This document shows, one piece after another, positions 1 through 63,665 of a stretch of 64,000 bases of DNA. The stretch's first letter is position 1; each line of letters begins with the position of its first letter. The translations under genes were made by a program, and so were the position numbers. The notes under the pieces were generated by a model, which saw only the letters and a list, made by a program, of their open reading frames with translations, searched no databases and was not told where the DNA came from. Origin of the DNA: Glycera tridactyla (Eukaryota); NCBI GenBank assembly GCA_965644265.1, contig OZ286459.1, forward strand, positions 92,752,001 through 92,816,000. Reading direction: 5' to 3'.

Positions 1-48
1 CTCCAAACTTGTCACCAGTATGGATCTTCACCTTGTAATTCTTCTTAG
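1..48 (-). CDS. R40 exon A (partial, PLAT N-half, G-type)
   Basis: Acceptor tttcag at 49-51; [15 protein letters not shown]; truncated by window edge. Confidence 0.85.
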
Positions 49-13363: not shown

Positions 13364-13418
<55 letters not shown>

Positions 13419-36593: not shown

Positions 36594-36624
<31 letters not shown>

Positions 36625-48600: not shown

Positions 48601-48797
48601 TCATGCTCGATGTGACATCCGCCGATAGGACCAACACATGGCAGTTCGAAGTCGAACTTATCAGTCCTGGAAAGTGCAATATATTCATATCAGTGTATCA
48701 GAGTTCTGTTCGGGCATTCCAAAATCTGTCTGACATCCATTATGAGCCTCATGAATCTGTCTTCTCATGATGAATCTGTGTGGCAGAGTAGGTATGG

Positions 48798-48872
<75 letters not shown>

Positions 48873-51800
48873 TGTGTGTGTGGGGGGTACAATTATAGGA
48901 AACAATTTGTCAATTGCTTGGATTTGCTCGCTAACTTCACAACACAAGAATTCAAAATTAGATTTTCCTGTCAAGATCAACAAGACTGCTATTTCTTTTC
49001 TGATTATTCCAAATAGACAAGACACGATGGCCTTCGTATAGGCACATCTATAAGCATGCAAAAAGTTATCCAGGTCAATCATGTGAGGACATTGAATCAT
49101 AAAGGTCTTGCATTGTCATATTACGCATTTTTCTCTCCTGACATCACATTGCCAAAATGAATTGCCAAAGGATCCATAGAATTATTATTCAGAAATAGAT
49201 GAACCCAGCTGTCTGTCATCACATGAAGCAATCCCTGTAATCTGGATGGATTCTGGATTTGGCAATGCAGTAGATAGTGGCAGATCTTTTGAAATATTCC
49301 CCTAAAGTACTTACTTTCCACGTTCGAAGTTATCTTTCAGGTTGTCCAACTTCAACTTGCCGGAGTCACCAAGAAGGCCAAAGAATGTGAGGAAGACATT
49401 AGCATCAGTTCCAGCATCTGGTTCGTCAGCTGTGTGCACTTTCACCTTGTATTTCGTATCTGTGGAAATAAATAGTATTGAAGGCAATTCATTGAGGAGG
49501 CGATGAATGTTGAAATGGTTGCTCCGTTGGTTCAGTTTGGTAATCAACACCTAAAACAGGATGATCAGTGGATTGGATTACTCTAAATGCCCATTTGCTT
49601 AATTCCCATGATGTAGAGAATTGCCTTAATGCATCAGATTAGAGACAAGTACCATGAGGATATTTCAATCAGTGAAAAGTTCTTGACAGTGCGCATATGG
49701 TGGCAATTTTTTGAAGGATAGATTTGATGGTCATGGCATATCAAAGAGACTTTGCAAGCACATTCTCAAAAAACCAGCAATGTAATTTCAGTCATACACC
49801 CAATTTACATACCTGGTCTGGGATAATCATCAAGGTCAAGCTCAGCAGAGGCATCAAGGTCTCCTTTCGGTTTCTTTCCTCGACCTTTGAATCCAAATGA
49901 AGGCATTGAGATATGAGGCATGTTAATGTCAAATCCTCTTCTGTGACCCTCATCATCAGATTCTTCATCTTTCTCTTTCTTCTCTTTTGGTTTCCTCTGC
50001 TTTTTATCCCAACCAAATTTGGGGCCTTTGAAGTGAGGTCCTTTGAAGCCAAAGTCAACATCAAAATCAAATGATGGTGGATCGGGGCATGATATATCAA
50101 AATCTATAGCCCCGTCATCTTTGTCCTTTGACAACCATTTGAGACAGGGGAACTCGTATGAATGCCCTCGTGGAACATCTTCGATGGTCACCTTGTCCAG
50201 TTTCCAGTCTGGAGCAGCACCAGAGTTGTCATGCTCAATATGACATTTACTAATTGGACCGACACATGGCAATTCGAAGTCGAACTCATCAATCCTACAA
50301 AAAGCAAACACATACTTGTTCAATAAATAGGCAGGTGCAATTCTGTCATTGTTGAATTTTCTTTACACGAAAGGATAGATTATTCTGAATAATACTTCAT
50401 GATTAGAGGATAGGAATGTAGGCATCCAATATGCAGATCACCCTGTAGCCAATGAATATATAGTTTGTGGACTGCCTTTATCGAAGGTGACTTGGCAGGG
50501 CTCCATGTTGATGCCTGCCTTTACTGGCAGACGGATTGATTAATAGGACACATACTTTTATCAGTCTACCTGCCTGATGGGCAAGTACATAATCATTATC
50601 TAGTTCATGATTATATGCAAAAGGGCAGGTGAAAATCACAGTTGAGGAAAAAAATTAATGGACATATCTGTGAAGTGCATTACTCACTTTCCTGGCTCGA
50701 AGTTATTCTTGATATTGTCCAGTTTCAGCTTGCCTGAGTCGCCCAAGAGACCAAAGAATGTAAGGAATACATTAGCATCTGTTCCGGCATCAGGTTGATC
50801 AGCAGTGTGGACCTTAACGTGGTATTTCGTATCTGAAAAGAAAGGGGAAAGTTCAGGAAGGATACATGAAAATGAAAGATTCACAGTTTGGTATCCTCTG
50901 CAGGTCTCATCTTGAATGGTGAACCTTGTTCATTTCATTCACCGATCTGAGCAGGAGCTCTGTTCTCATTTGCAAACTATGTTGTCCGCTTGAGAACCAG
51001 GGTGACTGCACCTAACTTGCTCTCTACATACTAATCAAAATCCAGATTATTGATTATTCCTTTATGACATTGTCTCAGAAGATTAAAAACATTTCAAGGC
51101 AGGTAGGTGATAATTTACATCTGTATATGCTCACCTGCGATTGATACTGAAGAGGGGGAGGAGCATGATCCACTCCATCCGATTGTTTACCAGCAGATTT
51201 GCACCACAGTCTTGTGTAGAAGAATGAATGATAGTGATACAAGCACATTTCATATTGACACTGCGCCCACACAACATACCTGGTCTGGGGTGATCCTTAA
51301 GGTCTAGCTCAGCAGAGGCATCAATGTCTCCTTTCGGTTTCTTTCCTCGGCCTTTGAAACCAAATGATGGCATCGAGAAATGTGGCATGTTGAAGTCGAA
51401 TCCTCTGCGACGACCTTCGTCATCAGACTCCTCGTCTTTCCCTTTCTTTGCCTTGGATTTCTTATCGAGGGAGAACTTCGGTCCTCTGACATCGATGCTC
51501 GGAGCTTCAACTTCAATTTGACCCTCAAGTCCAGTAGCTGGTAGGTCACAGGTGAGTTCTCGACCAATTGAACCATCTTCTTTATCCTTTGCAAACCATC
51601 GCTGACAGATGAACTCGTACAAATTCCCTTTTGCCATGTCGAGAATGACAACTTTGTCAAGGAACCATGCTGGTCCAGCACCAGAGTTGTCATGCTCAAT
51701 GAAGACTTTGTTGACGGGGCCAACATATGGAGATTTGATCTTGAATTTGTCGACACTGCAATCAGATGAACTTGAATGAGAGACAGCTGGAAGACTTCCC

Positions 51801-54800
51801 ACAATCATTTTATATCATCCATAACCAGAGAATCTCCCATCAGTCTAGAAAGCTGGTCATGATGCTCCCGGGATCAGTATTTGTACAGGCAAGTCGAGAA
51901 ACGAGGGAGGCAAAATCTTCCAGTCAGATGAGAAATTTATTGCATGTAAATCTTTTCTAGTGGATCTAAGGTTTGAAAACAGCACGAAAGACATGAGAAA
52001 TCATATTCTCACGTAACGCAATTGATGAAAGGTGTATATGACATAGGAATTCATGAGTAACTACCATTCAGATAAACTCTCAGCATGTAATTCCTTCCTC
52101 GATGAATATTCACCAAATTGAATATTTATCATGCAATGTATTTTTACCTGCATATAATCACCCTGAACTGTTGAATTTGTTCTTGTCTTTTATCAATAAG
52201 AACTACTTTTATAGTATTCAAGCTGCTGCTACTTGACAAGAACTCGTATATTGGCATGTGTAGACTCGAAACAATTCAACTTATTCTGGGAAAACTGTAC
52301 CTGATCCCAATATCAAGCATCCCTTTCAGATTAATGTGAAATGTATAGTTTGTTATGGCTGTAGTATTTTCATCGACTAATGCTGTTCCCTTCTACTCAC
52401 CTTCCAGTCTCAAAGTTATTCTTTGCATTGTCCAACTTGTGTTTACCAGAATCTCCATGGAGCCCGAAGAATGTCATGAACACATTAGCATCAGTGCCAG
52501 AACCAAACTTATCACCAGTATGAACAGTGACCTCATAATCATGCTCTGTAAGAAAGGCCAGACAAACAGAAATGAATGTTTATTCAATAAGCCAAACTGA
52601 TGGCACCAAAATTGCATCCAACAAAAACGCAACATGCAAACCAGGGAGTGCAGCACAGCTAGGAGTTTCCATGCGAGTTACTTTTTAGTTCAAGGATATA
52701 TGGATTAAGTGAGTGACCAAAAACATTCACAAAGTACAGTACCTAGTTATTTTCTGGTATTTACTACAGAAAGAAATTTCCTTAATCTCCTTTGAACAGA
52801 GTGTTTCAAAGGGAAGCGCTAGATATTCTATCAGTTGAAATTGAAGGTGCCAAGGTTTCACCATACAGATACATACTCTTCTAGAGGACACAATAGCTAA
52901 TCGTCCAAATTCCAAGCTCTGATCAGGAGCAGCACTAAGTTACTTCTTGACAGTTTTTTTTAGCAAATGAGATTTTGTTCATAAATACGGTAGTCAGATA
53001 AATAGTTTCACTCATCCACGCTGTGCCCTATATATCTCCAAACAATATCAGTGGCATCATAGCAGTTCAGTATCCATAATCTACTTGAGAGAATACTCAC
53101 CTCCATCAGGCAGAGATGGTACACTCACTCCACCCTCGAACGAGGCATCAAGGTCTTTCTTTCCCTTGACTTTTTTGTCACCCTTCTTGAAACCAAAGCT
53201 TGGCAGATTGAAGGAGAAGCCTCTACTCTTGCGATCACCTTCATCTCCAGATTCATCACCCTTCTTTTTCTTCTCTTTAGGTTTCTTCTCCTTCCCACCA
53301 AATCCGAATTTGCCTTTCGGTTTTTTCACTTTAGGCCCAGTCAAGTCTATACTGACTCCAGGTGCTTTGCCACCAATGTCAAGTTCTCCATCAAAATCTA
53401 GGTCAAATTCGCCACCCAGTGAGAGATCACGAGATATTGCACCATCCTCTTTGTCTTTGTCAAACCATCGTTGACATGGGAACACATATTTCTTTTCATG
53501 CTCAAGGTCATCAATCACAATCTTGTCCAAGAACCATGCAGGTCCAGGTCCAGTGTTGTCATGTTCGATATTGACACGCTCCACTGGTCCAACGAATGGA
53601 CAGTCAATGTCAAATGTATCCACCCTGCAAACAAATCATACCCAAATTAATGCATTTGAAAAAGTTAATAAGTGTGCTGGGTCGCAGACATGTGAAAGTC
53701 ATTATATGATTATTTCGTTGTGTCCATAGAATGAAGTTGAAATGATCATTGATTAATTGATCAAGTAGGATTTACTGTCTCTTCAAGTCAGGCAGGTTCA
53801 CTCAAGACGGGAAATTGGATGGCCTTGGTATATTTTTCTCTGCATATGATTCATAAGGTACATTACTTTTTATCTGCATCACTGTGCTCAGTTGAGTACA
53901 CAGAGAGAATGGCATAGCTTTATGTGTAAATGAAATAATATGAAGTTCACTCCAGCTCATATCGGGGATGGAATTATCCTGTTCTACTTGGAACTACATG
54001 CTTTCGAGTGAGAGTATTTTCAATTCCTCCCCACACAAATGCTTTTATGGATGGCCCTGATAAGATTGATTGGTTGGGTAGGGCTAATTGAGTAGAAATT
54101 ATGTAAATAAACATTTTGGAAACTCTGTCAAGACATGCGATCTCCAGGTAATATTACAGAAGTGCAGAAAATTCAATACTGCATAACGTCCACTTACTTT
54201 CCAGTTTCAAAGTTGTTCTTGGCATTATCAAGCTTATGTAATCCAGAATCACCGAGAGCACCAAAGAACTTCATGAACACATTGGCATCAGTACCGGATC
54301 CAAACTTGTCACCAGTATGGACATGGACTTTGTAGTTGCCTCCTGAAAAAAATAAACCGATTTGGTCTATCTCTCATATATATGACACAGGCTAGAGAAT
54401 GCCCATGTAGACAAAACTGCTTAATACATCAAATACCCAATCCCAATTATTCTTATATTACTAAATGCAGTTCTTGATACAACCAATAATTTTACACACT
54501 CCATAACTCAGCATTCTGCCTTCCATTGCTACTGAGATGGATGGATGAATAATGAACATGAGTACCATAGTATGATGCGTCCATTTATCAAGATATCCAT
54601 TTCATGTAGGACTCACCTGGATGCAACTACTTGGAAGTGACATATTCGTAATCACAATCACCAGAAAATCTACCATGTTAATGACAATTTTTCAAATGTT
54701 TGCGGGCCAACTGAACCTCGAAAATGACAATTGGAGGTTACTATCACTATTTGCTCCAACATCAGTATGACCAGCATAGGATACACTTTTCTCTCATTTG

Positions 54801-57800
54801 CCTGCAGAAACACAGACACCCACTGATCTGCAGAGACAACTCGAGGAGCAGATTTGCACCCCTATAAAATACACAGACATCACTTACACAATCAAGCATA
54901 TGTTTTCAACTCAAAAGACAACTTCCACTAGCCGTGCTGGTTCTTAATGAAGGTTATTTGTTAAGCATCTATGTGTCTGGTTGAGGCAAACCATTGTGTC
55001 TCAATGTGCGCCGATTGAGTTTGCCTACCTGGTGTTGGTACATCTGGAGTCTTGACCTTGATGTCACCCTCAGCTTTGACCTTAGGCTCCTTGTGTCCAC
55101 CTTTCATACTGAATGATGGCAATGTCACAGATGGGAGGTTGATATCAAAACCTCGACGACGGCCTTCATCATCAGATTCTTCCTCTTCCTTCTTTTTTGG
55201 TTCTCTCTCCTTCTTTTTCTTGTCTTTCGACCCAAATGAAAATTTCTTCTTGGGTTTCTTGACCTTTGGTCCTGTCAAATCAATACTAACACCTGGTGCC
55301 TTTGCATCAATGTCAAGATCTCCGTCAAAATCAAGATCAAATTCACCACCGAGGGAAAGATCACGAGATATTTCACCATCGTCCTTATCTTTGTCCAACC
55401 ATCGCTGACATGGGAAGACATACTTCTTCTTGTGCTCAATGTCATCGATGACAATCTTGTCAAGGAACCAGGCAGGTCCAGGTCCTGTGTTGTCATGCTC
55501 GATGTTGACACGCTCCACTGGTCCAACAAATGGACAATCAATCCCAAATGTATCCACCCTGGAAGGAGATATAATGAGGTCAGAACTAACATAGCAGTGT
55601 TAACAAAGAGCATAGATCATATTGACTGATTTCATTCATGATGTTGATGTGTATGCCTCATGCATGTACCTTTGGAATTGGTGCAGTCACATAATTGATA
55701 TGCCAGGACCAATCGATAACATTCAAAACCAAAGCATTGATGTGTGTAGTGATAATTACATTTCAGTGAGCAAACATTTCGAAGATGATCAAGTGCCCAT
55801 GACTGAGAAAATACCGAATTAAAAACAATTTTTCATCAGGACAACAAATTGATGAATGCAGGATAGGGCATAGATTACTTACTTTCCAGTCTCGAAGTTG
55901 TTCTTGGCATTGTCAAGCTTGTGTAGTCCGGAATCACCAAGGTCACCAAAGAACTTCAGGAACACATTGGCATCAGTACCCGAACCGAATTTGTCACCAG
56001 TATGTACATGTACTTTGTAGTTGCCATCTGCAAAAAACACAAGATTTGTGTCGAATGTTGAGCCATGAATACATAAGGATGTTGTCAATTCGAAGTAGAC
56101 ATAGGCGTTTTGCTCTTGAGTGGCTAATGACGACAGATACGTGATAACTGACATGAGAATGATTTGCATTTCCAATCAAAAAGTTCATTGATAGTTGTGT
56201 ATTGTTCAGCTTCTCACATCAATATCGGATTACCACGCAATAATTTATATCACATCATCAAGAGATATTTGCCACTGCAAATCATGTCTTCAGACATCAG
56301 GACATGTCAATAATGAACTTTATGGGATGAAATGTCACTGCAAATCATGTCTTCAGACATCAGGACATGTCAATAATGAACTTTATGGGATGAAATGTCA
56401 CTGAAATTTGTATGAAATGAAGTGATGTTGATGAGACATTGACCTCAGCTGACAACATTGACCTACCTGCTTTTGGTACATCTGGAGTCTTGACCTTGAG
56501 CTCACCCTCAGCTTTGACTTTAGGTTCTTTATGTCCTCCTTTCATACTGAATGATGGCAGTGACATAGATGGAAGGTTGATATCAAAGCCTCGACGACGG
56601 CCTTCATCATCAGAGTCCTCGTCCTCTTTTTTCTTCTTTGGTTCTTTCTCCTTCTTTTTCTTGTCTTTTGATCCAAATGAGAACTTCTTCTTTGGTTTCT
56701 TGACTTTGGGACCTTTCAACTCAATGTCAACCTCGGGACCTTCAGCATCAATGTCAATGTCACCGAGATCTAAATCGAATGCTCCACCAAGAGATCGATC
56801 TCGACTGATTTCTCCATCATCCTTCTTCTTGTCAAACCATCGTTGACAGGGGAACACATATTTCTTTTTATTCTCGAGATCGTCGATGATGACTTGCTCC
56901 AGGTACCAGGCAGGTCCAGCTCCCGAATTATCATGCTCAATCTGAACACGATCAACTGGACCAACATTCGGGCAGTTGATATTAAACGTATCCTTCCTGT
57001 GGAAAGATTCCCCATATTTGATGAAAATTTCAAATATGCAAAAACTAGGAAGTTGCCATGTTACTTCGATAATCCCTTACACACAACATCAATAATCTAT
57101 ATACTCGACCAAATTAAGAGGGTATCACATCACTTGTTAAAATTATGCTCATCTTCGTGGTATTCGAAAGGTTTTTTGTAGTTTGTTTGAGGTTTAACGG
57201 CATGTATCAACCTTAGGGTTATGTATGCAGTGTGTTCCTGGATAATGAAAGCTAGATGTTCGCAGACATCTCTCTCGCATACCCTGAACATAAGATGATG
57301 GAGAACCTGTAAGGTTTTCAAGTGGGAGTAGCTGACAGTTCAGACACACCTCTACCTGATCTGAACATACATAATAAACCTATGGTGGTGAAGAATTGAT
57401 ATGAATTGCATTGAAACACCATGAAAGTTCTTATCGCTGTTCACCTAAATGGTGACACTGAGTATGAATCACACTCACCTTCCAGTTTCAAAGTTATTTT
57501 TCGCGTTGTCAAGCTTGTATTTCCCTGAATCACCCAAGGGTCCAAAGAACGTCATGAAGACATTGGCGTCAGTGCCAGACCCGAATTTATCTCCAGTGTC
57601 GACATGTACCTTGTAGTTCCCTGAAAGAAGAAATGATCTATATCTGACAAAGCGTTCACTTTGCTATCATTATTTCTATGCATGTGGTCATACCCGGTGC
57701 ATGAGATATTCCATTAATCCTTGCACTTTCATAACTGAAAAAGTGGAAACTTTCACTGACACCGCTCATGATGTAAATTGTGTGAGCTTAATTCACACCC

Positions 57801-60800
57801 ATTGCCAGCTCTCTGATAAGAGTATTTTTGAATATTTCTTTACAACACCATCTGGTTCCATTACTGAAGTGATGATAACTTTTAGAACGCGACCCTTCTC
57901 CATCTTGGGGATGCATATTATTGGTTACTTCAATATCAATAGCTCTTTCTGTGTGAGAAGAAATTACATTACTTCGGTCAGCGACATTGATGGAATCTTA
58001 CTTTGCCTTCCCAGACATTGGAAAGAACATCACAAAAATTTTCAAATTTCATCCAAAATAGTGGTTTTCAGTGTCCTTGAGTGAACAGCCCTAGTTATAT
58101 TCAAGAGGAGTGGAAGTCTCCCAGCCATATAAGAGGGAGCGATTTTCAAGGATGTAACTTCGGATAACCAAATCAGTAATTATGCCAATTGTCTAGAGTA
58201 ATGAAGACAGTATTTGCAATGATCAAATGGGAGGATTCTGAATGTATTTGCGTAGAAGAATCTGGCTAAGAAAGTAATTATCACTCCAAAATTGTGAAGG
58301 TCTCCAGGTTTTGAATTACCTTTCTTGCCAGAGGCTTTGGGGATGTCCAAACCGGCATCAGCTTTGACCTTTCCTTTCTTGTCTCCACCTTTCATACTGA
58401 ATGGTGGTAGTGAGAAGTGGGGCATATTGATATCAAAATCACCCTTTCGACCTTTTGGTGATTTGATCTTCGGCCCTTGAACAACGACCTCAGTTTCTCC
58501 AATAACGATTTCACCACCAATGTCTGGTGGGTTGGGGCATGATAGGTCAAGATCGATTGCACCATCGCCCTTGTTCTTTGACAACCAACGATTACACGGG
58601 AATTCAAATACATTGCTGTTTGGAACATCTTCTATTGTCAGCTTGTCCAGCTTCCAGTCAGGTCCAGAACCTGAGTTGTCATGTTCGATATGGACCCGGT
58701 CGATAGCCGGACCAACACAGGGGACTTTAAAGTCAAATTCATCCACCCTGAAAACGGAAAAAGTGCAAAAACGATTAGCAATTGTTCAGACACACACGAT
58801 TTATTTGTTCAAATTATCTGCAAATCTGACGCTGTGCATTCAGTATATGTGAAGTCATAATATATGTGACTGACCAATATTTCTGGCATATACAAATTAC
58901 CACAGAAGAGTACATTTTCTTCGCCAGGGACAGTGGGTTCGATATCAGTACATACAAATATTGAAGGAGATATGCATAACATGAATGAATATTATATTTT
59001 TATGAATTGATCAGTATATGCCTGTAAGATACTTCCTGCAGGTAAAATTATCTTTACTTACTTTCCAGCTTCAAAGTTGTTCCTGATGTTGTCCAGCTTG
59101 AGTTTATCAGAACCCCCGAACATACCAAAGAAGGTGAGGAAAACGTTCGCATCAGTTCCAGCATCAGGTTCATCTGCTGTGTGAACCTTGACCTTATACT
59201 CGGTATCTGAAAAAGAAAGTTGATTAAAAAATATAACAAGCCAATTGGATGCTTCAATAACTGTCTAATTATAACGCATTAATGATTTGAATCAAAATTG
59301 AATAAATGTTCTTTCTGTGGTGAAATTAAGTTGCCATCGTTTTTTTGGCCCATGATCACAATCAGTTGAATTGATCATTAGGAGTAGTTGTGAGTAGATG
59401 ACAGCATTTCCCCAGTCATAGGATCCTCGAGAGATTCAAGAGCCATCCTATCAAATCAAGGTAAATGTTCATATTCTAATAATTGAAATCTTACCTGGCC
59501 TGGTTGGTGGCAGGAAGTCCATGTCAGCAGAATCTCCTTTGCCTTTCTTCTTAAGCTTGAATGATGGTATTGATATATGCGGTAGGTTGATATCGAATCC
59601 ATGGCGCCGACCTTCATCATCTGACTCGTCATCTTTCTCTTTCTTCTCTTTGGGTTTCCTCTCCTTCTTATGCCGGTCTAATGAGAACTTTGGTCCTTTG
59701 AATTTTGGTCCCTTGAAATCGGGACCTTTGAAGTTGAAGTCAACATCAAAGTCAAAAGATGGTGGATCGGGACATGATAGATCAAAATCGATCTCACCAT
59801 CACCTTTGTCCTTCGACAGCCATTTGTGGCAGGGGAACTCGTATACATGTCCTCGTGGAACATCCTCGATGGTGACTTTGTCCATTTTCCAGTCTGGTGC
59901 AGCACCAGAGTTGTCATGTTCGATGTGACATCCGCCGATAGGACCAACACATGGGAGCTCAAAGTCAAATTCATCAAGTCTGAAAGGTGCATAATGCATT
60001 GTCAAGTATCTCATTATATATATCCTATCATGCAAATACTAAAGAATTACACAAAATTGAGTGATGAGACTAGTTTGCATTTAACGACATATATATGACA
60101 TATATTTGAGACAATGTATGCTATGTGGATGCTACACAATTGAAAAGAGGTTGATAAAAGCGATTGAAATCAATATTGTAGTTTGTGGGTAGAACATATA
60201 AGACAACTTTTGGTTGAAGGTCAGCATTGACACGAAACAGATTAGAAATTTGTCGAAAGTTAGGGTTGTCTTCACATCAGCCAGTCTGCCCATTGCAAGC
60301 CATTCTGTATAGCCTAAGTCACCCACTCTGTATAGCCTCTGTCCAGTTCATCTTCAGTCTGGCCTACCGCCCAATCTACTGAATTGGGTTTAAAAGACAT
60401 TTTCAGCTGATTACCCGTGATTATGTGAACACAGAATGGGCCTGTGATTTTTATGCTTCAGAAAATTAGCAGAGGGAACTCCCTATGAATCGCCCCCTCC
60501 CATTCTGAATCTTTGGGAAACTGATTCAGTGTCAATATACACAGTTATACGAAGCTGAGCAAATGCAGACAGGAATGACCACGTGTACTTACTTTCCAGC
60601 TTCAAAGTTATCCTTCAAGTTGTCTAACTTCAACTTGCCAGAGTCACCCAGAAGACCAAAGAATGTGAGAAAGACATTGGCATCTGTTCCTGCATCTGGT
60701 TCATCAGCTGTTTGTACTTTCACTTTGTACTTTGTATCTGGAAAAGAAAGAGTTCACCAATCTAAAAAATCTATTTCACATGATATTACAAGCTGACAAA

Positions 60801-63665
60801 GGAATGGTATTAACTGCAGAATAAAAAATTACTGATTCTCCTTGAAAAGGTAGGACATGTTTCTGTTTATGGCCAGTATGGGCTAGCTTTCATAAGCCAT
60901 TCAACATTGCGATGACGATCTTTAGGATTCCATGTCCTAGATCATGTCTCCAAATCAGTATTGAAGACGTGTAGCAATTGAAAGAGTGAAACAGCAGTGT
61001 TAGTGATTCTGATACATACATGAACAATCAGATGTATCTTAAGTACTGTTGAGACACACCATGATAGATATGGAACGCATATTGCTGAAAATCCACTCAA
61101 CATACCTGGTCTAGGATAATCATGAAGGTCGAACTCAGCAGAGGCATCGATGTCTCCTTTTGGTTTCTTTCCTCGGCCCTTGAAGCCCCATGATGGCATG
61201 GAGATGTGTGGCATATTGATGTCAAAACCTCTTCTGTGGTCCTCATCGTCAGATTCCTCATCTTTCTCTTTCTTTTCTTTGGGTTTCTTCTGTTTCCTAT
61301 CCCAGCCGAACTTGGGGCCCTTGAAATGAGGTCCTTTGAGACCGAAATCTGCATCAAAGTCGAATGATGGAGGATCTGGGCATGATAGATCAAAATCGAT
61401 TGCACCATCGTCCTTGTCCTTTGACAACCATTTGAGACAGGGGAACTCATACACATGTCCTCGTGGAACATCTTCAATGGTAACCTTGTCCAGTTTCCAG
61501 TCTGGGGCAGCTCCAGAGTTGTCATGCTCGATGTGACATCCACTGATAGGACCAACACATGGCAGCTTGAAGTCGAATTTGTCAACCCTGAAAGAGGATT
61601 CATTTATGATGAGAAATCATCTTGCTGAATGAAGATATCCATATGAAGGACACGCTTCTAAACAGCTGATTTGAAAAAAATGTGGACATCTGTGCATGCC
61701 ACAAAACATTACACATATCCAAGATCATGGTATCTGGTGCAATTATTATGTCACTTTAGTGTTCAATCTTTAGCTTTCAAGTAGGCAAACTGATATCCAT
61801 TACAACTATGCCCTAGTGGGAACATTATGGCAGGAATTGTGAATCATGTTGCAGATTTGTATTTTTTTCCCTGAAAATTTCCTTAGATTCATTGACAAAA
61901 TCCACCGAGATGTGTCTACTTACTTTCCTGGCTCGAAGTCATCCTTCAGAAGATTGTCCAACTTCAACTTGCCAGAGTCACCAAGCAGACCAAAGAATGT
62001 GAGGAAGACATTGGCATCAGTTCCAGCATCTGGTTCGTCAGCTGTATGTACTTTAACTTTGTATTTCGTGTCTGCAAAAATGAAACCTCAGCATCATTTA
62101 TATGGTGATGATCAATGATAAGATGGCATTGCCGATTCTATATTAATGTATTTGCTACAAAACACTACAAATGTTGGCCAATAATTACCATTCAGACTGT
62201 TGCGATCCTTGGACATTGACTGTCAACCTATGTGTAAAGTCAGGCTGTAGCATATTCTACAGAATAGATGCACTGTCAGATTGGCAATCATCTACGAGTA
62301 GAGTGTGATTCGAGAAAGAAATTCTCAGTCTAAGTTCGCCAATTCTCAGATAGTGGTATTGCATTAAGAGATACCTGTACCTAACAATCGATGCCGAAAA
62401 TATAGCAATGGTGTAATGGGATCACCTGGTAGTGATTTGTGAAGAGACATGGGCACACATTCACGTGGGATTGTTATCTTTGGCTTGAATAAGGAGGGGC
62501 TTTTTGATAAAGCTTACAATGATATTCATCAGAATATGGCATTTATAGCTTTATTTGTATGAGCAGCACATTTCATAGTTCGATGGAGAAATAGTATATT
62601 GGAAGGTCATGATTTATGGACTCGGTAGTCCGTTTTGAGAATAGAGAGAGTGCTGCCCTGTCATGGCAAAAACGTCTCTTGGATGCTGACACTAGCAGGA
62701 AAAGGAAGTGTTTGCACATGCTCCATGGGGAAGCCTGATGATTAAAGCCTGGCGACGCAAAATTCACCTTAGATTCATTACTGGTAAAATCTGATAGTTA
62801 TAAAAATGAAGCAAAAATACATACCTGGTCTCGGGTGATCACCAAGATCAAGCTCAGCAGAAGCATCAAGATCTCCTTTTGGTTTCTTGCCTCGACCCTT
62901 GAAACCCCATGATGGCATTGAGAACTTGGGGCCCTTGAAGTGAGGTCCTTTCAAGCCAAAATCAGCATCAAAGTCGAATGATGGTGGATCTGGGCATGAT
63001 AGATCAAAATCAATTTCACCATCATCTTTGTCCTTCGACAACCACTTGAGACATGGGAACTCATACAAGTGTCCTCGTGGAACATCTTCGATGGTGACCT
63101 TGTCCAGTTTCCAGTCTGGTGCAGCACCAGAATTGTCATGCTCAATGTGACATCCATCAATAGGACCAACACATGGCAGCTCGAAGTCAAATTTATCGGT
63201 CCTGAAAGAAAGTATATCATCAATGGCAAATGTTGCAACAGTTAACAAGGTGAGTAATGCAAAACAATAGATTTGACAATAGTTGATAGCATTTTCATGA
63301 ACATGTGCCAAGACCGCCTCTCAATTGCCCATACCTCTGCTGCCTGGAATACTGACTCCAAGCTGCACAACGACAGATAGAAAACAAACAAGATCATTTT
63401 CATTCAGGAAATGTTCATGTACTGCAATGTTGAGGTCCCCTGTATTTCTAATAGACAGAATAGGAGGTCAAGTGATTGCTCGTGACTTGCTTTAATGATG
63501 TAGAAGTGATCACTTACTTTCCAGGCTTGAAGTTGTCCTTGAGGAGATTGTCCAACTTCAACTTCCCAGAGTCACCAAGAAGACCAAAGAATGTGAGGAA
63601 GACATTGGCATCAGTCCCAGCATCTGGCTCATCAGCGGTGTGGACTTTAATCTTGTATTCTGTAT
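1..63665 (-). CDS. LOXHD1: Internal part (79 exons, ~7,870 aa, open at both ends) of a giant tandem PLAT/LH2-repeat protein, LOXHD1-like
   Basis: Strict A/B exon alternation over the whole window, all GT-AG, phases chain into one frame; PLAT motifs GTDANV, NFExG, HDNSG, PxW, FPCxxW. Symbol means 'LOXHD1-like architecture' only; orthology is not established. Confidence 0.85.
63..97. repeat. Degenerate (ATG)n microsatellite
   Basis: atgatgacgatgataatgatgatgatgataatgat. Confidence 0.7.
487..1004 (-). CDS. R39 exon B (PLAT C-half + linker)
   Basis: AG/GT, 518 nt; [31 protein letters not shown]. Confidence 0.9.
1404..1545 (-). CDS. R39 exon A (G-type)
   Basis: AG/GT, 142 nt; [26 protein letters not shown]. 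Confidence 0.9.
1735..1807. repeat. 73-bp dispersed repeat fragment (copy at 57282-57354; partial at 10190-10210)
   Basis: Shared ccctgaacataagatgatgg...agtggga...ctgacagt.cagacacacctcta. Confidence 0.75.
2104..2603 (-). CDS. R38 exon B
   Basis: AG/GT, 500 nt; [29 protein letters not shown]. Confidence 0.9.
2636..2810. mobile_element. MITE-like element (CAGT termini, Tc1/mariner-pogo-like)
   Basis: Termini cagtaaaacctg / caggttatactg (11 of 12 inverted match), TA at right flank, internal direct repeats (gtgaaatcctgtc, aaaaatctggccc), non-coding. Confidence 0.7.
3199..3343 (-). CDS. R38 exon A (mixed type)
   Basis: AG/GT, 145 nt; [27 protein letters not shown]. Confidence 0.9.
3786..4267 (-). 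CDS. R37 exon B
   Basis: AG/GT, 482 nt; [23 protein letters not shown]. Confidence 0.9.
4801..4945 (-). CDS. R37 exon A (G-type)
   Basis: AG/GT, 145 nt; [22 protein letters not shown]. Confidence 0.9.
5350..5846 (-). CDS. R36 exon B
   Basis: AG/GT, 497 nt; [22 protein letters not shown]. Confidence 0.9.
5976..6132. other. Assembly gap (intronic)
   Basis: N run. Confidence 0.99.
6158..6270. repeat. Degenerate (TGGA/TGAA)n microsatellite beside gap
   Basis: ggatggatggatggatggatgaatgg... Confidence 0.75.
7387..7531 (-). CDS. R36 exon A (G-type)
   Basis: AG/GT, 145 nt; [27 protein letters not shown]. Confidence 0.9.
8326..8816 (-). CDS. R35 exon B
   Basis: AG/GT, 491 nt; [22 protein letters not shown]. 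Confidence 0.9.
8919..9094. mobile_element. MITE copy 1 (degenerate), inverted relative to copy 2
   Basis: ta|tagtcaaacct...aggttcgactc|ta; internal tcgcatcaaa is the reverse complement of tttgatgcga in copy 2. Confidence 0.75.
9355..9532. mobile_element. MITE copy 2 (intact TIRs, TA target-site duplication)
   Basis: Perfect 11-bp TIR cagtcgaacct / aggttcgactg flanked by TA at 9353-54 and 9533-34; 178 bp, non-coding. Confidence 0.85.
9675..9819 (-). CDS. R35 exon A (G-type)
   Basis: AG/GT, 145 nt; [27 protein letters not shown]. Confidence 0.9.
10287..10780 (-). CDS. R34 exon B
   Basis: AG/GT, 494 nt; [22 protein letters not shown]. Confidence 0.9.
11228..11375 (-). CDS. R34 exon A (G-type)
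   Basis: AG/GT, 148 nt (or 145 nt from the second AG of a CAGCAG acceptor, end 11372); [22 protein letters not shown]. Confidence 0.88.
11996..12495 (-). CDS. R33 exon B
   Basis: AG/GT, 500 nt; [23 protein letters not shown]. Confidence 0.9.
12812..12992. other. Assembly gap (intronic)
   Basis: N run. Confidence 0.99.
13056..13200 (-). CDS. R33 exon A (G-type)
   Basis: AG/GT, 145 nt; [22 protein letters not shown]. Confidence 0.9.
13365..13416. repeat. (CAAT)n microsatellite, ~13 units
   Basis: Direct reading; shorter CAAT/ATTG runs at ~4416-4440, ~8836-8856 and ~36596-36620. Confidence 0.9.
13751..14172 (-). CDS. R32 exon B (last of P block)
   Basis: AG/GT, 422 nt; [33 protein letters not shown]. 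Confidence 0.9.
14560..14707 (-). CDS. R32 exon A (P-type)
   Basis: AG/GT, 148 nt; [22 protein letters not shown]. Confidence 0.9.
15426..15913 (-). CDS. R31 exon B (P-type, long linker)
   Basis: AG/GT, 488 nt; [23 protein letters not shown]. Confidence 0.9.
16463..16610 (-). CDS. R31 exon A (P-type)
   Basis: AG/GT, 148 nt; [22 protein letters not shown]. Confidence 0.9.
16963..17339 (-). CDS. R30 exon B (P-type, short linker)
   Basis: AG/GT, 377 nt; [27 protein letters not shown]. Confidence 0.9.
17793..17940 (-). CDS. R30 exon A (P-type)
   Basis: AG/GT, 148 nt; [22 protein letters not shown]. Confidence 0.9.
18469..18845 (-). CDS. R29 exon B (P-type, short)
   Basis: AG/GT, 377 nt; [14 protein letters not shown]. 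Confidence 0.9.
19165..19312 (-). CDS. R29 exon A (P-type)
   Basis: AG/GT, 148 nt; [15 protein letters not shown]. Confidence 0.9.
19829..20205 (-). CDS. R28 exon B (P-type, short)
   Basis: AG/GT, 377 nt; [14 protein letters not shown]. Confidence 0.9.
20546..20693 (-). CDS. R28 exon A (P-type)
   Basis: AG/GT, 148 nt; [15 protein letters not shown]. Confidence 0.9.
21186..21562 (-). CDS. R27 exon B (P-type, short)
   Basis: AG/GT, 377 nt; [19 protein letters not shown]. Confidence 0.9.
21902..22049 (-). CDS. R27 exon A (P-type)
   Basis: AG/GT, 148 nt; [15 protein letters not shown]. Confidence 0.9.
22652..23028 (-). CDS. R26 exon B (P-type, short)
   Basis: AG/GT, 377 nt; PDWKPE..DHPRP. 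Confidence 0.9.
23286..23433 (-). CDS. R26 exon A (P-type)
   Basis: AG/GT, 148 nt; [15 protein letters not shown]. Confidence 0.9.
23805..24328 (-). CDS. R25 exon B (G-type PLAT, P-type linker tail)
   Basis: AG/GT, 524 nt; [22 protein letters not shown]. Confidence 0.9.
24775..24919 (-). CDS. R25 exon A (G-type)
   Basis: AG/GT, 145 nt; [22 protein letters not shown]. Confidence 0.9.
25473..25987 (-). CDS. R24 exon B (G-type)
   Basis: AG/GT, 515 nt; [17 protein letters not shown]. Confidence 0.9.
26279..26423 (-). CDS. R24 exon A (G-type)
   Basis: AG/GT, 145 nt; [22 protein letters not shown]. Confidence 0.9.
27163..27686 (-). CDS. R23 exon B (G-type)
   Basis: AG/GT, 524 nt; [17 protein letters not shown]. 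Confidence 0.9.
28220..28364 (-). CDS. R23 exon A (G-type)
   Basis: AG/GT, 145 nt; [22 protein letters not shown]. Confidence 0.9.
29053..29555 (-). CDS. R22 exon B (G-type)
   Basis: AG/GT, 503 nt; [17 protein letters not shown]. Confidence 0.9.
29925..30069 (-). CDS. R22 exon A (G-type)
   Basis: AG/GT, 145 nt; [22 protein letters not shown]. Confidence 0.9.
30741..31144 (-). CDS. R21 exon B (G-type, short linker)
   Basis: AG/GT, 404 nt; [29 protein letters not shown]. Confidence 0.9.
31558..31702 (-). CDS. R21 exon A (G-type)
   Basis: AG/GT, 145 nt; [22 protein letters not shown]. Confidence 0.9.
32057..32583 (-). CDS. R20 exon B (G-type)
   Basis: AG/GT, 527 nt; [17 protein letters not shown]. 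Confidence 0.9.
32966..33110 (-). CDS. R20 exon A (G-type)
   Basis: AG/GT, 145 nt; [22 protein letters not shown]. Confidence 0.9.
33493..33671. repeat. 90-bp tandem duplication (2 copies)
   Basis: agatgttttt at 33501 and 33591; near-identical units. Confidence 0.9.
33801..34294 (-). CDS. R19 exon B (G-type)
   Basis: AG/GT, 494 nt; [22 protein letters not shown]. Confidence 0.9.
34930..35074 (-). CDS. R19 exon A (G-type)
   Basis: AG/GT, 145 nt; [22 protein letters not shown]. Confidence 0.9.
35369..35425. repeat. Degenerate (CAT/CAC)n microsatellite
   Basis: catcatcatcaccatcgccatcacc... Confidence 0.7.
35529..36031 (-). CDS. R18 exon B (G-type)
   Basis: AG/GT, 503 nt; [17 protein letters not shown]. 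Confidence 0.9.
36443..36587 (-). CDS. R18 exon A (G-type)
   Basis: AG/GT, 145 nt; [22 protein letters not shown]. Confidence 0.9.
36879..37369 (-). CDS. R17 exon B (G-type)
   Basis: AG/GT, 491 nt; [17 protein letters not shown]. Confidence 0.9.
38309..38453 (-). CDS. R17 exon A (G-type)
   Basis: AG/GT, 145 nt; [30 protein letters not shown]. Confidence 0.9.
38704..38803. repeat. 25-bp minisatellite x4 (aagccacggctgcggaaaaggtgtg)
   Basis: Four head-to-tail copies, no spacers, small variants in copies 3 and 4. Confidence 0.9.
38960..39137. other. Assembly gap (intronic)
   Basis: N run. Confidence 0.99.
39568..39986 (-). CDS. R16 exon B (last of P block)
   Basis: AG/GT, 419 nt; [33 protein letters not shown]. 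Confidence 0.9.
40097..40506. other. Assembly gap (intronic)
   Basis: N run. Confidence 0.99.
40571..40715 (-). CDS. R16 exon A (P-like)
   Basis: AG/GT, 145 nt; [22 protein letters not shown]. Confidence 0.9.
41181..41563 (-). CDS. R15 exon B (P-type, short)
   Basis: AG/GT, 383 nt; PDWKPE..LPSRP. Confidence 0.9.
42037..42181 (-). CDS. R15 exon A (P-type)
   Basis: AG/GT, 145 nt; [22 protein letters not shown]. Confidence 0.9.
42774..43252 (-). CDS. R14 exon B (P-type, long)
   Basis: AG/GT, 479 nt; PDWKPE..DYPRP. Confidence 0.9.
43549..43696 (-). CDS. R14 exon A (P-type)
   Basis: AG/GT, 148 nt; [15 protein letters not shown]. Confidence 0.9.
44116..44492 (-). CDS. R13 exon B (P-type, short)
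   Basis: AG/GT, 377 nt; [21 protein letters not shown]. Confidence 0.9.
44848..44995 (-). CDS. R13 exon A (P-type)
   Basis: AG/GT, 148 nt; [22 protein letters not shown]. Confidence 0.9.
45475..45851 (-). CDS. R12 exon B (P-type, short)
   Basis: AG/GT, 377 nt; [21 protein letters not shown]. Confidence 0.9.
46301..46448 (-). CDS. R12 exon A (P-type)
   Basis: AG/GT, 148 nt; [21 protein letters not shown]. Confidence 0.9.
47057..47433 (-). CDS. R11 exon B (P-type, short)
   Basis: AG/GT, 377 nt; [14 protein letters not shown]. Confidence 0.9.
47702..47849 (-). CDS. R11 exon A (P-type)
   Basis: AG/GT, 148 nt; [15 protein letters not shown]. Confidence 0.9.
48290..48666 (-). CDS. R10 exon B (P-type, short)
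   Basis: AG/GT, 377 nt; [14 protein letters not shown]. Confidence 0.9.
48800..48882. repeat. (GT)n microsatellite, ~41 units
   Basis: Direct reading, one g>a interruption. Confidence 0.95.
49315..49459 (-). CDS. R10 exon A (P-type)
   Basis: AG/GT, 145 nt; [15 protein letters not shown]. Confidence 0.9.
49813..50294 (-). CDS. R9 exon B (P-type, long)
   Basis: AG/GT, 482 nt; [17 protein letters not shown]. Confidence 0.9.
50688..50832 (-). CDS. R9 exon A (P-type)
   Basis: AG/GT, 145 nt; [22 protein letters not shown]. Confidence 0.9.
51280..51755 (-). CDS. R8 exon B (G-type PLAT, P-type linker tail)
   Basis: AG/GT, 476 nt; [22 protein letters not shown]. Confidence 0.9.
52401..52545 (-). 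CDS. R8 exon A (G-type)
   Basis: AG/GT, 145 nt; [22 protein letters not shown]. Confidence 0.9.
53101..53624 (-). CDS. R7 exon B (G-type)
   Basis: AG/GT, 524 nt; [17 protein letters not shown]. Confidence 0.9.
54198..54342 (-). CDS. R7 exon A (G-type)
   Basis: AG/GT, 145 nt; [22 protein letters not shown]. Confidence 0.9.
55029..55558 (-). CDS. R6 exon B (G-type)
   Basis: AG/GT, 530 nt; [17 protein letters not shown]. Confidence 0.9.
55883..56027 (-). CDS. R6 exon A (G-type)
   Basis: AG/GT, 145 nt; [22 protein letters not shown]. Confidence 0.9.
56273..56403. repeat. 63-bp tandem duplication (2 copies)
   Basis: cactg at 56273, 56336 and 56399; identical units. Confidence 0.9.
56467..56996 (-). 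CDS. R5 exon B (G-type)
   Basis: AG/GT, 530 nt; [22 protein letters not shown]. Confidence 0.9.
57282..57354. repeat. 73-bp dispersed repeat fragment (second copy)
   Basis: Same-orientation match to 1735-1807. Confidence 0.75.
57479..57620 (-). CDS. R5 exon A (G-type)
   Basis: AG/GT, 142 nt; [21 protein letters not shown]. Confidence 0.9.
58320..58747 (-). CDS. R4 exon B (last of P block)
   Basis: AG/GT, 428 nt; [31 protein letters not shown]. Confidence 0.9.
59062..59206 (-). CDS. R4 exon A (P-type)
   Basis: AG/GT, 145 nt; [22 protein letters not shown]. Confidence 0.9.
59495..59979 (-). CDS. R3 exon B (P-type, long)
   Basis: AG/GT, 485 nt; [22 protein letters not shown]. Confidence 0.9.
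60593..60737 (-). CDS. R3 exon A (P-type)
   Basis: AG/GT, 145 nt; [22 protein letters not shown]. Confidence 0.9.
61106..61587 (-). CDS. R2 exon B (P-type, long)
   Basis: AG/GT, 482 nt; [17 protein letters not shown]. Confidence 0.9.
61924..62071 (-). CDS. R2 exon A (P-type)
   Basis: AG/GT, 148 nt; [15 protein letters not shown]. Confidence 0.9.
62825..63201 (-). CDS. R1 exon B (P-type, short)
   Basis: AG/GT, 377 nt; [17 protein letters not shown]. Confidence 0.9.
63518..63665 (-). CDS. R1 exon A (P-type)
   Basis: AG/GT, 148 nt; [22 protein letters not shown]. Confidence 0.9.

What the first reader, a model, noticed from the sequence alone, without database searches (positions are those of the whole stretch)
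1..63665. Two PLAT subtypes arranged in alternating blocks
Seen: P-type ([13 protein letters not shown][L/M/P], LSCPDPP) versus G-type (HTGDKFG[S/A]G, PAW[F/Y]L, often LSLGG). Order in transcription direction: P x4+ (R1-4), G x4 (R5-8), P x8 (R9-16), G x9 (R17-25), P x7 (R26-32), G x8+ (R33-40). The differences lie in the beta1-beta2 loop and next to the conserved Trp; the equivalent beta1-beta2 region carries Ca2+/membrane-contact residues in 5-lipoxygenase PLAT. An acidic DEPD loop replaces a basic/aromatic DKF loop. Inference: the protein is banded into segments with different binding chemistry.
Basis: partly seen in the sequence, partly recalled or inferred. Interest (0 to 1): 0.7.

Follow-up and report, generated by a model that had tools for sequence, protein, structure and literature searches.

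The report
Giant PLAT-repeat gene with banded subtypes
One transcribed animal gene encodes at least 40 lipid-binding-type PLAT domains in a row, and these fall into two old, selectively kept flavours that sit in alternating blocks, which suggests, but does not prove, two different binding surfaces along one huge scaffold protein.

Summary
The minus strand carries one gene that runs off both window ends. It has 40 two-exon PLAT+linker cassettes and a 7,867-aa open spliced model. All four N gaps lie in introns. Public spliced contigs confirm six junctions, including the P-to-G boundary R4/R5.

By motif, the order is exactly as reported: P4, G4, P8, G9, P7, G8.

The trees refine this. P is a supported clade. 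"G" splits into a tight G-core (R5-7, R17-25) and mosaic, canonical-looking units (R8, R33-39).

P-core and G-core differ at 29 fixed PLAT columns plus linker type, not only at two loops. Block borders lie inside linkers, and each linker tail matches the next PLAT.

The copies are old: introns are mostly unalignable and dS is about 0.75-1.6. They are under strong purifying selection (dN/dS 0.05-0.1).

One metagenome-derived relative has both types with the same loops, so the split predates that divergence. Generic PLATs resemble G, so P is the derived type.

P has an acidic loop 1, and its Leu-Leu aligns with the Trp-Phe insertion loop of coral 8R-lipoxygenase. G has Lys-Phe and Lys-Lys there.

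Different binding chemistry is plausible but untested.

Other first-stage notes cover this same stretch; none covers other DNA.

The parts
58320..63665 (-). P block 1: units R1-R4 (R1-3 P-core; R4 is a divergent P' unit that closes the block). The gene continues upstream beyond 64000.
   Evidence: Gene model; motifs; trees; spliced contigs confirm the R3 and R4 junctions.
51280..57620 (-). G block 1: units R5-R8 (R5-7 G-core; R8 is a mosaic unit with a P-type linker tail).
   Evidence: Junctions R4B/R5A, R5A/B and R5B/R6A are seen in spliced contigs.
39568..50832 (-). P block 2: units R9-R16 (R9-15 P-core; R16 is a hybrid P' unit with HTGAEKDAG and PDWKL). The N gap at 40097-40506 lies in the R16 A/B intron.
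23805..38453 (-). G block 2: units R17-R25, all G-core. R25 has a chimeric linker (G head, P tail). The N gap at 38960-39137 lies in the intron just upstream, between R16B and R17A.
13751..23433 (-). P block 3: units R26-R32 (R26-31 P-core; R32 is a P' unit).
1..13200 (-). Heterogeneous C-terminal block: units R33-R39 plus partial R40 (exon A at 48-1). These have G-like motifs but mosaic, long-branched domains. N gaps at 12812-12992 (R33 A/B intron) and 5976-6132 (R36 A/B intron). The gene continues past position 1.
61924..62071 (-). Example P-type exon A (R2). It encodes beta1, loop 1 (HTADEPDAG), beta2-3 and the NLLKD loop. Acceptor cAG|, donor AA|GTAAGT. It begins with 2 nt and ends with 2 nt of split codons.
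   Evidence: Pfam PLAT profile positions 1-47; alignment to coral 8R-LOX 2fnq.
61106..61587 (-). Example P-type exon B (R2). It encodes the rest of PLAT (PDWKL, VPRGHV, LSCPDPP) plus a long P linker ending DYPRP. It begins with 1 nt and ends with 1 nt of split codons.
   Evidence: Pfam PLAT profile positions 50-110.
32966..33110 (-). Example G-type exon A (R20): HTGDKFGSG loop and NKKNNFETG loop.
32057..32583 (-). Example G-type exon B (R20): PAWFL, IPHKKK, LSLGG, then a G linker ([47 protein letters not shown]).
58320..58747 (-). Block border inside a linker: R4 exon B (P' PLAT, CPNPP..GGEIV head, G-type tail LPPFSMKGG). R16 exon B (39568-39986) has the same layout; R32 exon B (13751-14172) has the same P' PLAT and head but a third kind of tail (PSFHLK).
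   Evidence: table; sequences.
23805..24328 (-). Block border inside a linker: R25 exon B (G-core PLAT, G head, P-type tail [21 protein letters not shown]). R8 exon B (51280-51755) also ends in a P tail before P block 2.
   Evidence: table; sequences.

Best explanation
SHOWN
- The window is the middle of one giant, transcribed animal gene on the minus strand.
- The gene is built from at least 40 two-exon cassettes. Each cassette encodes one PLAT/LH2 domain plus an AHNAK-like K/E-rich linker.
- The cassettes fall into three groups. One is a derived P class of 19 units: 16 are near-identical at protein level and 3 are divergent P' units, each of which ends a P block. The second is a G-core class of 12 units. 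The third is 8 mosaic, canonical-looking units (R8, R33-39).
- Module borders lie in the middle of the linkers, so nearly every PLAT is flanked by the linker tail and head that go with its kind.

INFERRED FROM TREES AND DIVERGENCE
- The blocks arose by local tandem duplication of cassettes.
- The alternation comes from old duplication of a P'-to-G junction.
- Later the P-core expanded or exchanged sequence between blocks.
- Purifying selection has since held both classes. The P/G split predates the divergence from at least one other organism.

INFERRED MECHANISM (about one chance in three)
- The two classes present different surfaces at the end of the beta-sandwich that binds Ca2+ and membrane in lipoxygenase PLAT domains.
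- P has an acidic cluster (D-E-x-D in loop 1, and Asp before the Trp) plus Leu-Leu in the insertion loop. It would bind membranes or partners in a Ca2+-dependent, C2-like way.
- G has Lys-Phe in loop 1, Lys-Lys in the insertion loop and an HKKK turn. It would bind anionic lipids directly.
- The protein would then be a long membrane-associated scaffold with stretches of switchable and constitutive attachment.

The confidence figure is for the whole statement. The anatomy and evolutionary reading alone I hold at about 0.85, and the binding mechanism at about 0.35.
For: Gene model: 79 exons, 23,604 nt, 7,867 codons and no stop. PLAT (PF01477) matches both exon halves. Contigs from 4 runs in 2 studies are spliced exactly at six model junctions, with no depth in the introns.

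Classes: the P|G split has support 98/88. Without the diagnostic columns, P18 has 96/95 and G-core 95/95. G-core has 99/99 on DNA. There are 29 fixed P-core/G-core columns, and the linker classes co-vary with the PLAT class.

Age and selection: introns are mostly unalignable. Within P-core, dS is 0.75 and dN 0.036. Within G-core, dS is 1.6 and dN 0.155. Synonymous variants occur inside the invariant loops.

Conservation elsewhere: a metagenome-derived relative has P-like exon B followed by an exon A with HTADEPDAG, and G units with HTGDKFGSG. Its units nest in the P clade and in G-core. They keep 13-16 of 20 P states and 17-19 of 20 G states in exon B.

Direction of change: generic PLAT domains score higher against the G HMM than the P HMM.

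Loops: the P residues 'NLLKD' align with 8R-LOX 'KWFHN', the loop deleted in the Delta413-417 crystal form. G has 'N-KKN' there. Strand and loop limits come from a pLDDT-97 model of a canonical relative, which matches 8R-LOX PLAT at TM 0.86. That lipoxygenase PLAT domains show Ca2+-dependent membrane binding through such loops is from PMC9682198 and PMC7436259.
Against: No binding test was done, and there is no structure model of the window's own domains, because a spliced sequence has no reference to hand in.

Which residues would ligate Ca2+ is not established by alignment alone. Loop 1 of the Ca2+-activated 8R-LOX (GDREHAG) looks like neither type. The Glu of 'NFE.G' is kept in all G units but is Lys or Arg in most P units, which cuts against P being the Ca2+ binder.

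The P-core DNA tree is star-like. Exon and intron similarities disagree for some pairs: R28/29 have dS 0.13 but introns only 75% identical, while R10/27 have dS 0.65 and introns 75% identical. The duplication or conversion history is therefore unresolved.

Evidence from other species rests on short contigs that come from effectively one sample. Only one P-to-G border is confirmed in RNA.
Confidence: 0.55

Rival explanations
1. The two classes differ in protein-protein or intramolecular contacts, not in lipid or Ca2+ chemistry. Examples would be each PLAT packing against its own linker tail and head, or recruiting different partners.
For: The linker tail always matches the following PLAT and the head matches the preceding one, so tail-PLAT-head behaves as the conserved module. 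The fixed differences are spread over the whole domain (29 columns), including a P-specific Cys pair and the beta6-beta7 turn at the opposite end of the fold. PLAT domains are known to bind proteins as well as lipids (PMC8051682). The closest solved sequence match to exon B is the Rab6-binding PLAT of Rab6IP1.
Against: The only columns that separate all P units from all G units sit in loop 1 and beside the Trp, at the membrane end of lipoxygenase PLAT domains. No partner is known.
Confidence: 0.3
2. The bands only record duplication history. Two cassette lineages were amplified locally, and the differences have no functional meaning beyond keeping a folded PLAT domain.
For: Neighbouring units are often closest relatives (R11-13, R28/29, R6/7). 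Clustering of like units is what tandem duplication predicts. The P-core tree is star-like.
Against: dN/dS is 0.05-0.1 at high dS. Type-specific residues in surface loops are invariant despite synonymous change and are kept in another organism for both types. Fold maintenance alone would not fix alternative residues in exposed loops.
Confidence: 0.2
3. The blocks are alternative-splicing cassettes. Because all units share exon phases, isoforms could contain only P or only G stretches, and the 'banded protein' may never exist as such.
For: Every unit starts and ends in the same phase, so any whole-unit skip keeps the frame. One contig variant joins 59976 to 60619 with 32 other letters.
Against: Single contigs run R3B-R4A-R4B-R5A-R5B and R5B-R6A without skipping, which joins P to G. 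No skipping joint was seen in the 5.9 kb tested.
Confidence: 0.1
4. Assembly artefact: collapsed or mis-joined repeats around the four gaps create the apparent blocks.
For: There are four N gaps in a repetitive locus. Two of them flank R16, the hybrid unit at a block border.
Against: All units differ at synonymous sites and have unique introns. The reading frame is open through 79 exons. Independent RNA-derived contigs match the R3-R6 stretch, including one border. Three of the five borders have no gap nearby.
Confidence: 0.03

Closest known systems
LOXHD1 and LOXHD1-like multi-PLAT proteins
   Same: These proteins are made of tandem PLAT/LH2 repeats. Generic multi-PLAT proteins are the top hits of the profile search. 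Their repeats also differ among themselves, for example TSD../WHL against TGD../WFL flavours. LOXHD1 is a membrane-associated protein of hair-cell stereocilia (PMC8051682).
   Different: LOXHD1 has 15 repeats (PMC8051682), whereas this gene has at least 40. Here each repeat is followed by a 55-106 aa AHNAK-like linker. The repeats form long homogeneous runs of two conserved classes. The P class (ADEPDAG loop, Trp-Lys) was not found in any of the 150 best representatives except exon-sized fragments. Orthology was not tested.
Lipoxygenase N-terminal PLAT (C2-like) domains: coral 8R-LOX, 11R-LOX, 5-LOX, 15-LOX-2
   Same: These are the best solved sequence matches to exon A. They are also the best fold matches of a canonical relative's model (TM 0.86, rmsd 1.4 A). 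They bind Ca2+ and membranes through loops at one end of the sandwich (PMC9682198, PMC7436259). The diagnostic P/G positions align with those loops.
   Different: Lipoxygenases have a single PLAT fused to a catalytic domain. Neither P nor G reproduces the lipoxygenase loop sequences, and Ca2+ binding here is untested.
AHNAK / AHNAK-like repeat proteins
   Same: The linker part of the profile alone hits PLAT-less repeat proteins. One of them (P0143) has an N-terminal PDZ followed by repeats, which is the AHNAK layout. The G linker matches P0073 repeats at E = 2e-9 around RRGFDIxLPxVSxPxFxxKG. The P linker matches P0140 at E = 7e-6 around KGPHFKGPK.
   Different: In this gene a folded PLAT domain sits between every repeat. 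The similarity is short and of low complexity. The N-terminus lies outside the window, so a PDZ domain cannot be checked.
Polycystin-1 and Rab6IP1 (DENND5A) PLAT domains
   Same: These are the top solved sequence matches to the G-type exon B. Polycystin-1 shares HDNxGxxPAWFL.
   Different: They are single PLAT domains in unrelated architectures.

Membership tests
PLAT/LH2 domain (Pfam PF01477) | Match to the family HMM above the curated cut-off | tested here: met
   Exon A scores 30.6 bits (profile positions 1-47). Exon B scores 35.6-46.6 bits (profile positions 50-110). The cut-off is 23.
PLAT/LH2 domain (Pfam PF01477) | Conserved core residues (GTD after loop 1, His-Asp before the invariant Trp, second Trp in beta7) | tested here: met
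   These residues are invariant or nearly so in the 39 units. The same columns are invariant in 60 generic PLAT domains.
PLAT/LH2 domain (Pfam PF01477) | Eight-stranded beta-sandwich fold | tested here: inconclusive
   Only a canonical relative (P0007:440-557) was folded. It gave pLDDT 97.1, eight strands and TM 0.86 to 8R-LOX PLAT. The window's own spliced domains have no reference and were not folded.
LOXHD1-like multi-PLAT proteins | Protein made of tandem PLAT repeats | tested here: met
   40 units in one open spliced frame. The best database hits are multi-PLAT proteins.
LOXHD1-like multi-PLAT proteins | About 15 repeats joined by short plain linkers; orthology to LOXHD1 | tested here: not met
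   There are at least 40 repeats with 55-106 aa AHNAK-like linkers. Orthology itself was not tested.
AHNAK-like repeat proteins | Repeated GPK../..MP.F..KG.. modules | tested here: met
   The linker profile hits P0073, P0112, P0140 and P0143. Pairwise E-values are 2e-9 and 7e-6. The match is at motif level only.
AHNAK-like repeat proteins | N-terminal PDZ domain followed by an uninterrupted repeat array | not testable with these tools
   The N-terminus is outside the window. The array here is interrupted by a PLAT domain in every unit.
Ca2+-dependent membrane-binding PLAT (lipoxygenase C2-like type) | Acidic Ca2+ ligands and hydrophobic insertion residues in the loops at one end of the sandwich | tested here: inconclusive
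   P has D-E-P-D in loop 1, Asp before the Trp, and LL at the 8R-LOX WF position. G has K-F and K-K at those positions. However, the NFE Glu is kept in G and is often K or R in P.
Ca2+-dependent membrane-binding PLAT (lipoxygenase C2-like type) | Ca2+-dependent binding to membranes | not testable with these tools
   This needs recombinant domains and liposome or Ca2+ assays.

The most novel reading that the evidence does not exclude
P-type PLAT would be a previously undescribed Ca2+-switchable PLAT variant, and G-type a constitutive anionic-lipid binder. Interleaved with AHNAK-like linkers, they would make a protein of more than 8,000 aa that attaches to membranes in alternating constitutive and Ca2+-triggered stretches. 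That would be a graded, zipper-like membrane scaffold, for example for membrane repair or cortical support.
Probability: 0.15. Interest if true: 0.75.

Novelty: new variant of a known kind. Interest (0 to 1): 0.5.

Why it matters
PLAT repeats in proteins such as LOXHD1 are usually treated as equivalent beads.

This locus shows long runs of two sharply different repeat classes within a single gene. Each class is conserved across species. Each has stayed almost unchanged at protein level while synonymous sites and introns diverged.

That makes it a natural experiment on what individual PLAT repeats do. One P domain and one G domain can be expressed and compared directly for Ca2+, lipid and partner binding.

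The finding also defines a derived PLAT subtype, with an acidic loop 1 and Trp-Lys, that the profile and word searches found only as exon-sized fragments. It shows that the conserved module is linker tail-PLAT-linker head rather than the exon pair.

If the two classes do differ in membrane binding, the protein would be a new kind of patterned membrane scaffold.

Tried and rejected
1. Recent amplification as the cause of the near-identical P units. Rejected: introns are mostly unalignable and dS is about 0.75.

2. A simple super-repeat, in which one P+G block was duplicated with a fixed shift such as 17 units. It is partly suggested by R14/R31, R11-13 with R28/29, R10/R27 intron 2 and R3/R15. 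It is not supported as one event. The P-core DNA tree is star-like. Cross-block synonymous distances are lower for P (about 20-35% of same-residue codons differ) than for G (about 38-56%). R33-39 do not match R17-25.

3. Structure prediction of the window's own P and G domains. Not run. A canonical relative was folded instead.

4. Identifying the organism. Run names are coded. A paper search for the assembly and sample accessions found nothing.

5. Word-based protein search with exon B. It returned only six exon-sized fragments.

6. Metagenome scan for more relatives. Only contigs of the same assembly series were close; the rest were generic PLAT domains at under 50% identity. Block order in another species could therefore not be tested. 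Only one G-G and one P-P adjacency were seen.

7. Rfam scan of the window. No match.

8. Papers on a PLAT-AHNAK hybrid. None found.

Full report
**What is in the window.**
The window has 64,000 bases at about 41% G+C, with four N runs at 5976-6132, 12812-12992, 38960-39137 and 40097-40506. Motif and HMM scans of the six frames place every PLAT piece on the minus strand. There are 40 'exon A' pieces and 39 'exon B' pieces in strict alternation.

Each PLAT unit is split into two exons:
- Exon A is 142-148 nt. Its acceptor is cAG| and its donor AA|GTAAGT. It begins with 2 nt and ends with 2 nt of split codons.
- Exon B is 377-530 nt. It begins with 1 nt and ends with 1 nt of split codons, with donor G|GT.

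Splice sites chosen by phase and consensus give 79 exons, 23,604 nt and a 7,867-codon frame without a stop. The gene runs off both ends of the window. Pfam PLAT (PF01477) matches exon A at profile positions 1-47 and exon B at 50-110, above the curated cut-off.

**Gaps.**
All four N runs lie in introns of this model: R36 A/B, R33 A/B, between R16B and R17A, and R16 A/B. All units share the same phases, so the frame is kept whatever the gaps hide. This means continuity cannot be proved from frame. Unit counts around R16/R17, R33 and R36 are minima, and the pairing of the exons on either side of three gaps is unverified.

**Transcription.**
Contigs of four public runs from two studies hold only the exonic parts of 55000-60900, with zero depth in the introns. 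They are joined exactly at six predicted junctions: 59979/60593, 59206/59495, 58746/59061, 57619/58319, 56995/57478 and 56027/56467. All have CT..AC ends, which is GT..AG on the minus strand. One contig runs R3B-R4A-R4B-R5A-R5B. The P-to-G border R4/R5 is therefore present in one spliced molecule.

**The observation.**

| Motif | P units | G units |
|---|---|---|
| PDWK[LMP] | 19/19 | 0/20 |
| PAW[FY]L | 0/19 | 18/20 |
| TADEPDAG | 16/19 | 0/20 |
| LSCPDPP | 15/19 | 0/20 |
| LSLGG | 0/19 | 9/20 |

Six runs among 39 labels against 20.5 expected gives P = 8.6e-7. Tandem duplication alone would cluster like units, so this test says little.

**Trees.**
- With all columns, P and G are the two sides of one branch (98/88).
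- With the diagnostic columns removed, 18 P units (96/95) and a G-core of 12 units, R5-7 and R17-25 (95/95), remain clades. R8, R16 and R33-39 lie between them on long branches.
- On DNA the G-core has 99/99 support.
- P-core and G-core differ at 29 fixed columns of about 118. Only five columns separate all P from all G: two in loop 1, two beside the Trp and one in beta6.
- R8 and R33-39 are mosaics, with 4-12 P states, 10-20 G states and 5-10 neither.
- Generic PLAT domains from the database score higher against the G HMM than the P HMM.

So the G motifs are the canonical state, P is derived, and the last 'G block' is not one subtype.

**Linkers and borders.**
Linker type co-varies with PLAT type:
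- P units have a [10 protein letters not shown] head and a tail [17 protein letters not shown][HY]PRP.
- G-core units have an [12 protein letters not shown] head, a K-rich then acidic middle, and a tail [21 protein letters not shown].
- A third head (CPNPP..GGEIV..) occurs in R4, R16, R32 and several mosaic units.

At block borders the switch falls inside exon B:
- R4 and R16 (P') end in a G tail before a G block.
- R8 and R25 end in a P tail before a P block.

The conserved module is therefore linker tail-PLAT-linker head, offset from the exon pair. Each of the three P blocks ends with a divergent P' unit.

The linker part of a profile of all 39 exon B translations hits PLAT-less repeat proteins. 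One of them has an N-terminal PDZ, which is the AHNAK layout. Pairwise E-values are 2e-9 for the G linker against P0073 and 7e-6 for the P linker against P0140.

**Age and selection.**
Introns of different units are almost never alignable. The exceptions are R11/12/13, R28/29 and R10/27/28, at 68-80% identity.

| Comparison | Median dS | Median dN | dN/dS |
|---|---|---|---|
| Within P-core | 0.75 | 0.036 | 0.05 |
| Within G-core | 1.6 | 0.155 | 0.10 |
| P-core against G-core | about 2 | 0.36 | about 0.17 |

These are Nei-Gojobori estimates. Codons inside the invariant loops vary synonymously. The near-identity of P domains (median 93% amino-acid identity) is therefore held by purifying selection. 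It is not a sign of recent copying or of assembly duplication.

The history is not simple. The P-core DNA tree is star-like. Cross-block synonymous distances are smaller for P than for G. Exon and intron similarities disagree for some pairs. I read this as an old alternating scaffold, with P' units marking the borders, followed by later expansion or exchange of P-core cassettes. This is inference.

**Other organisms.**
Short contigs of one metagenome (an NCBI assembly and an ENA assembly of what appears to be the same sample) carry the same two-exon architecture.
- One contig has a P-like exon B followed by an exon A with the identical HTADEPDAG loop.
- Another contig has G exon B, G exon A (HTGDKFGSG) and G exon B.
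- In a tree, the foreign P-like pieces nest inside the P clade (99/91) as sister to the window's 16 P-core units. The foreign G-like pieces sit in G-core.
- At the 29 class-defining columns, the foreign P pieces keep 8 of 9 P states in exon A and 13-16 of 20 in exon B. The foreign G pieces keep 9 of 9 and 17-19 of 20 G states.

Both states are conserved in their own class. This is the pattern expected for functional divergence. It rests on one other source.

**Where the differences sit.**
A canonical relative (P0007:440-557) folds with pLDDT 97.1 into eight strands. It matches coral 8R-lipoxygenase PLAT at TM 0.86 and rmsd 1.4 A, and also Stable-5-LOX.

By alignment to this model:
- The DEPD/DKF motif is in the beta1-beta2 loop.
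- 'NLLKDNF' (P) against 'N-KKNNF' (G) is in the beta3-beta4 loop.
- The Asp or Ala before the Trp ends the beta5-beta6 loop.
- The Lys or Phe/Tyr after the Trp opens beta6.

In an up-down sandwich these loops lie at the same end. This is topological inference, because no coordinates were available.

The P residues Leu-Leu align with the Trp-Phe of 8R-LOX in the loop that is deleted in the Delta413-417 crystal form. Lipoxygenase PLAT domains bind Ca2+ and membranes through such loops (PMC9682198, PMC7436259). My own recollection, which is not a tool result, is that 5-LOX uses W13/F14, residues 40-46 and W75 at the equivalent places.

Charges:

| Region | P | G |
|---|---|---|
| Loop 1 | -3.9 | -1.3 |
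| Whole domain | -8.7 | -5.2 |
| beta6-beta7 turn | VPRGHV | IPHKKK |

The beta6-beta7 turn is at the other end of the fold. P also has a class-specific Cys pair (PCVGP..GCH) that G lacks.

**Interpretation.**
The evolutionary and anatomical reading is well supported. The functional reading is P as a Ca2+-dependent, C2-like binder and G as a direct binder of anionic lipids. I hold it at about one in three. One point cuts against it: the Glu of NFE.G, which lies in the beta3-beta4 loop, is kept in G but is often Lys or Arg in P.

The rivals, in order of weight:
- The classes differ in protein or intramolecular contacts.
- The bands record only duplication history.
- The blocks are splicing cassettes.
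- The blocks are an assembly artefact (very unlikely).

**Comparison with known systems.**
This is a multi-PLAT protein in the broad LOXHD1-like sense. It differs in having at least 40 units, AHNAK-like linkers, and long runs of two conserved classes. No paper describing such a hybrid or such banding was found. I rate it a new variant of a known kind, of moderate interest.

**Limits.**
- The organism is not identified.
- The window's own domains were not folded.
- Only one block border was checked in RNA.
- Cross-species evidence comes from one sample.
- The ends of the gene lie outside the window. An earlier first-stage note proposes a downstream winged-helix plus phosphorylase-like module; this was not tested here.

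Noticed in passing
window 57181-57358 (intron between R5 exon A and exon B): A dispersed element of about 177 nt has summed contig depth of about 30,000-84,000 in all four runs, with many different flanks. Partial copies at 82-84% identity lie at 1731-1807 and 10168-10210. It looks like a highly expressed SINE-like repeat. There is no Rfam match.
   Followed up: partly
window, all exon B linkers (e.g. 32058-32381, 61107-61385): The inter-PLAT linkers match PLAT-less repeat proteins from other organisms (P0073, P0112, P0140). They also match a PDZ-plus-repeat protein with the AHNAK layout (P0143). The shared motifs are RRGFDIxLPxVSxPxFxxKG and KGPHFKGPK.
   Followed up: partly
window, P-type exon B, e.g. 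61500-61587 (R2): P units carry a class-specific Cys pair and His (LPCVGPIxGCHIEH). G units have a single Cys three residues earlier ([13 protein letters not shown]). The pattern is kept in the foreign P-like and G-like pieces. Its meaning is unknown; it could be a disulfide or a metal site.
   Followed up: no
window 59976-60619: In runs X2 and X6 a contig joins 59976 to 60619 with 32 other letters in between, instead of using the normal R3 A/B junction. It may come from a paralogous unit, be an assembly chimera, or be an alternative splice.
   Followed up: no
window 36588-36630 (just upstream of R18 exon A): The polypyrimidine tract of this acceptor is a (TGAT)n microsatellite.
   Followed up: no
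L036 (metagenome contig Ga0170475_128605569): This contig holds an intron-less open frame with at least eight consecutive canonical PLAT domains joined by short linkers. It shows that multi-PLAT arrays without AHNAK-like linkers occur in other sampled organisms.
   Followed up: no
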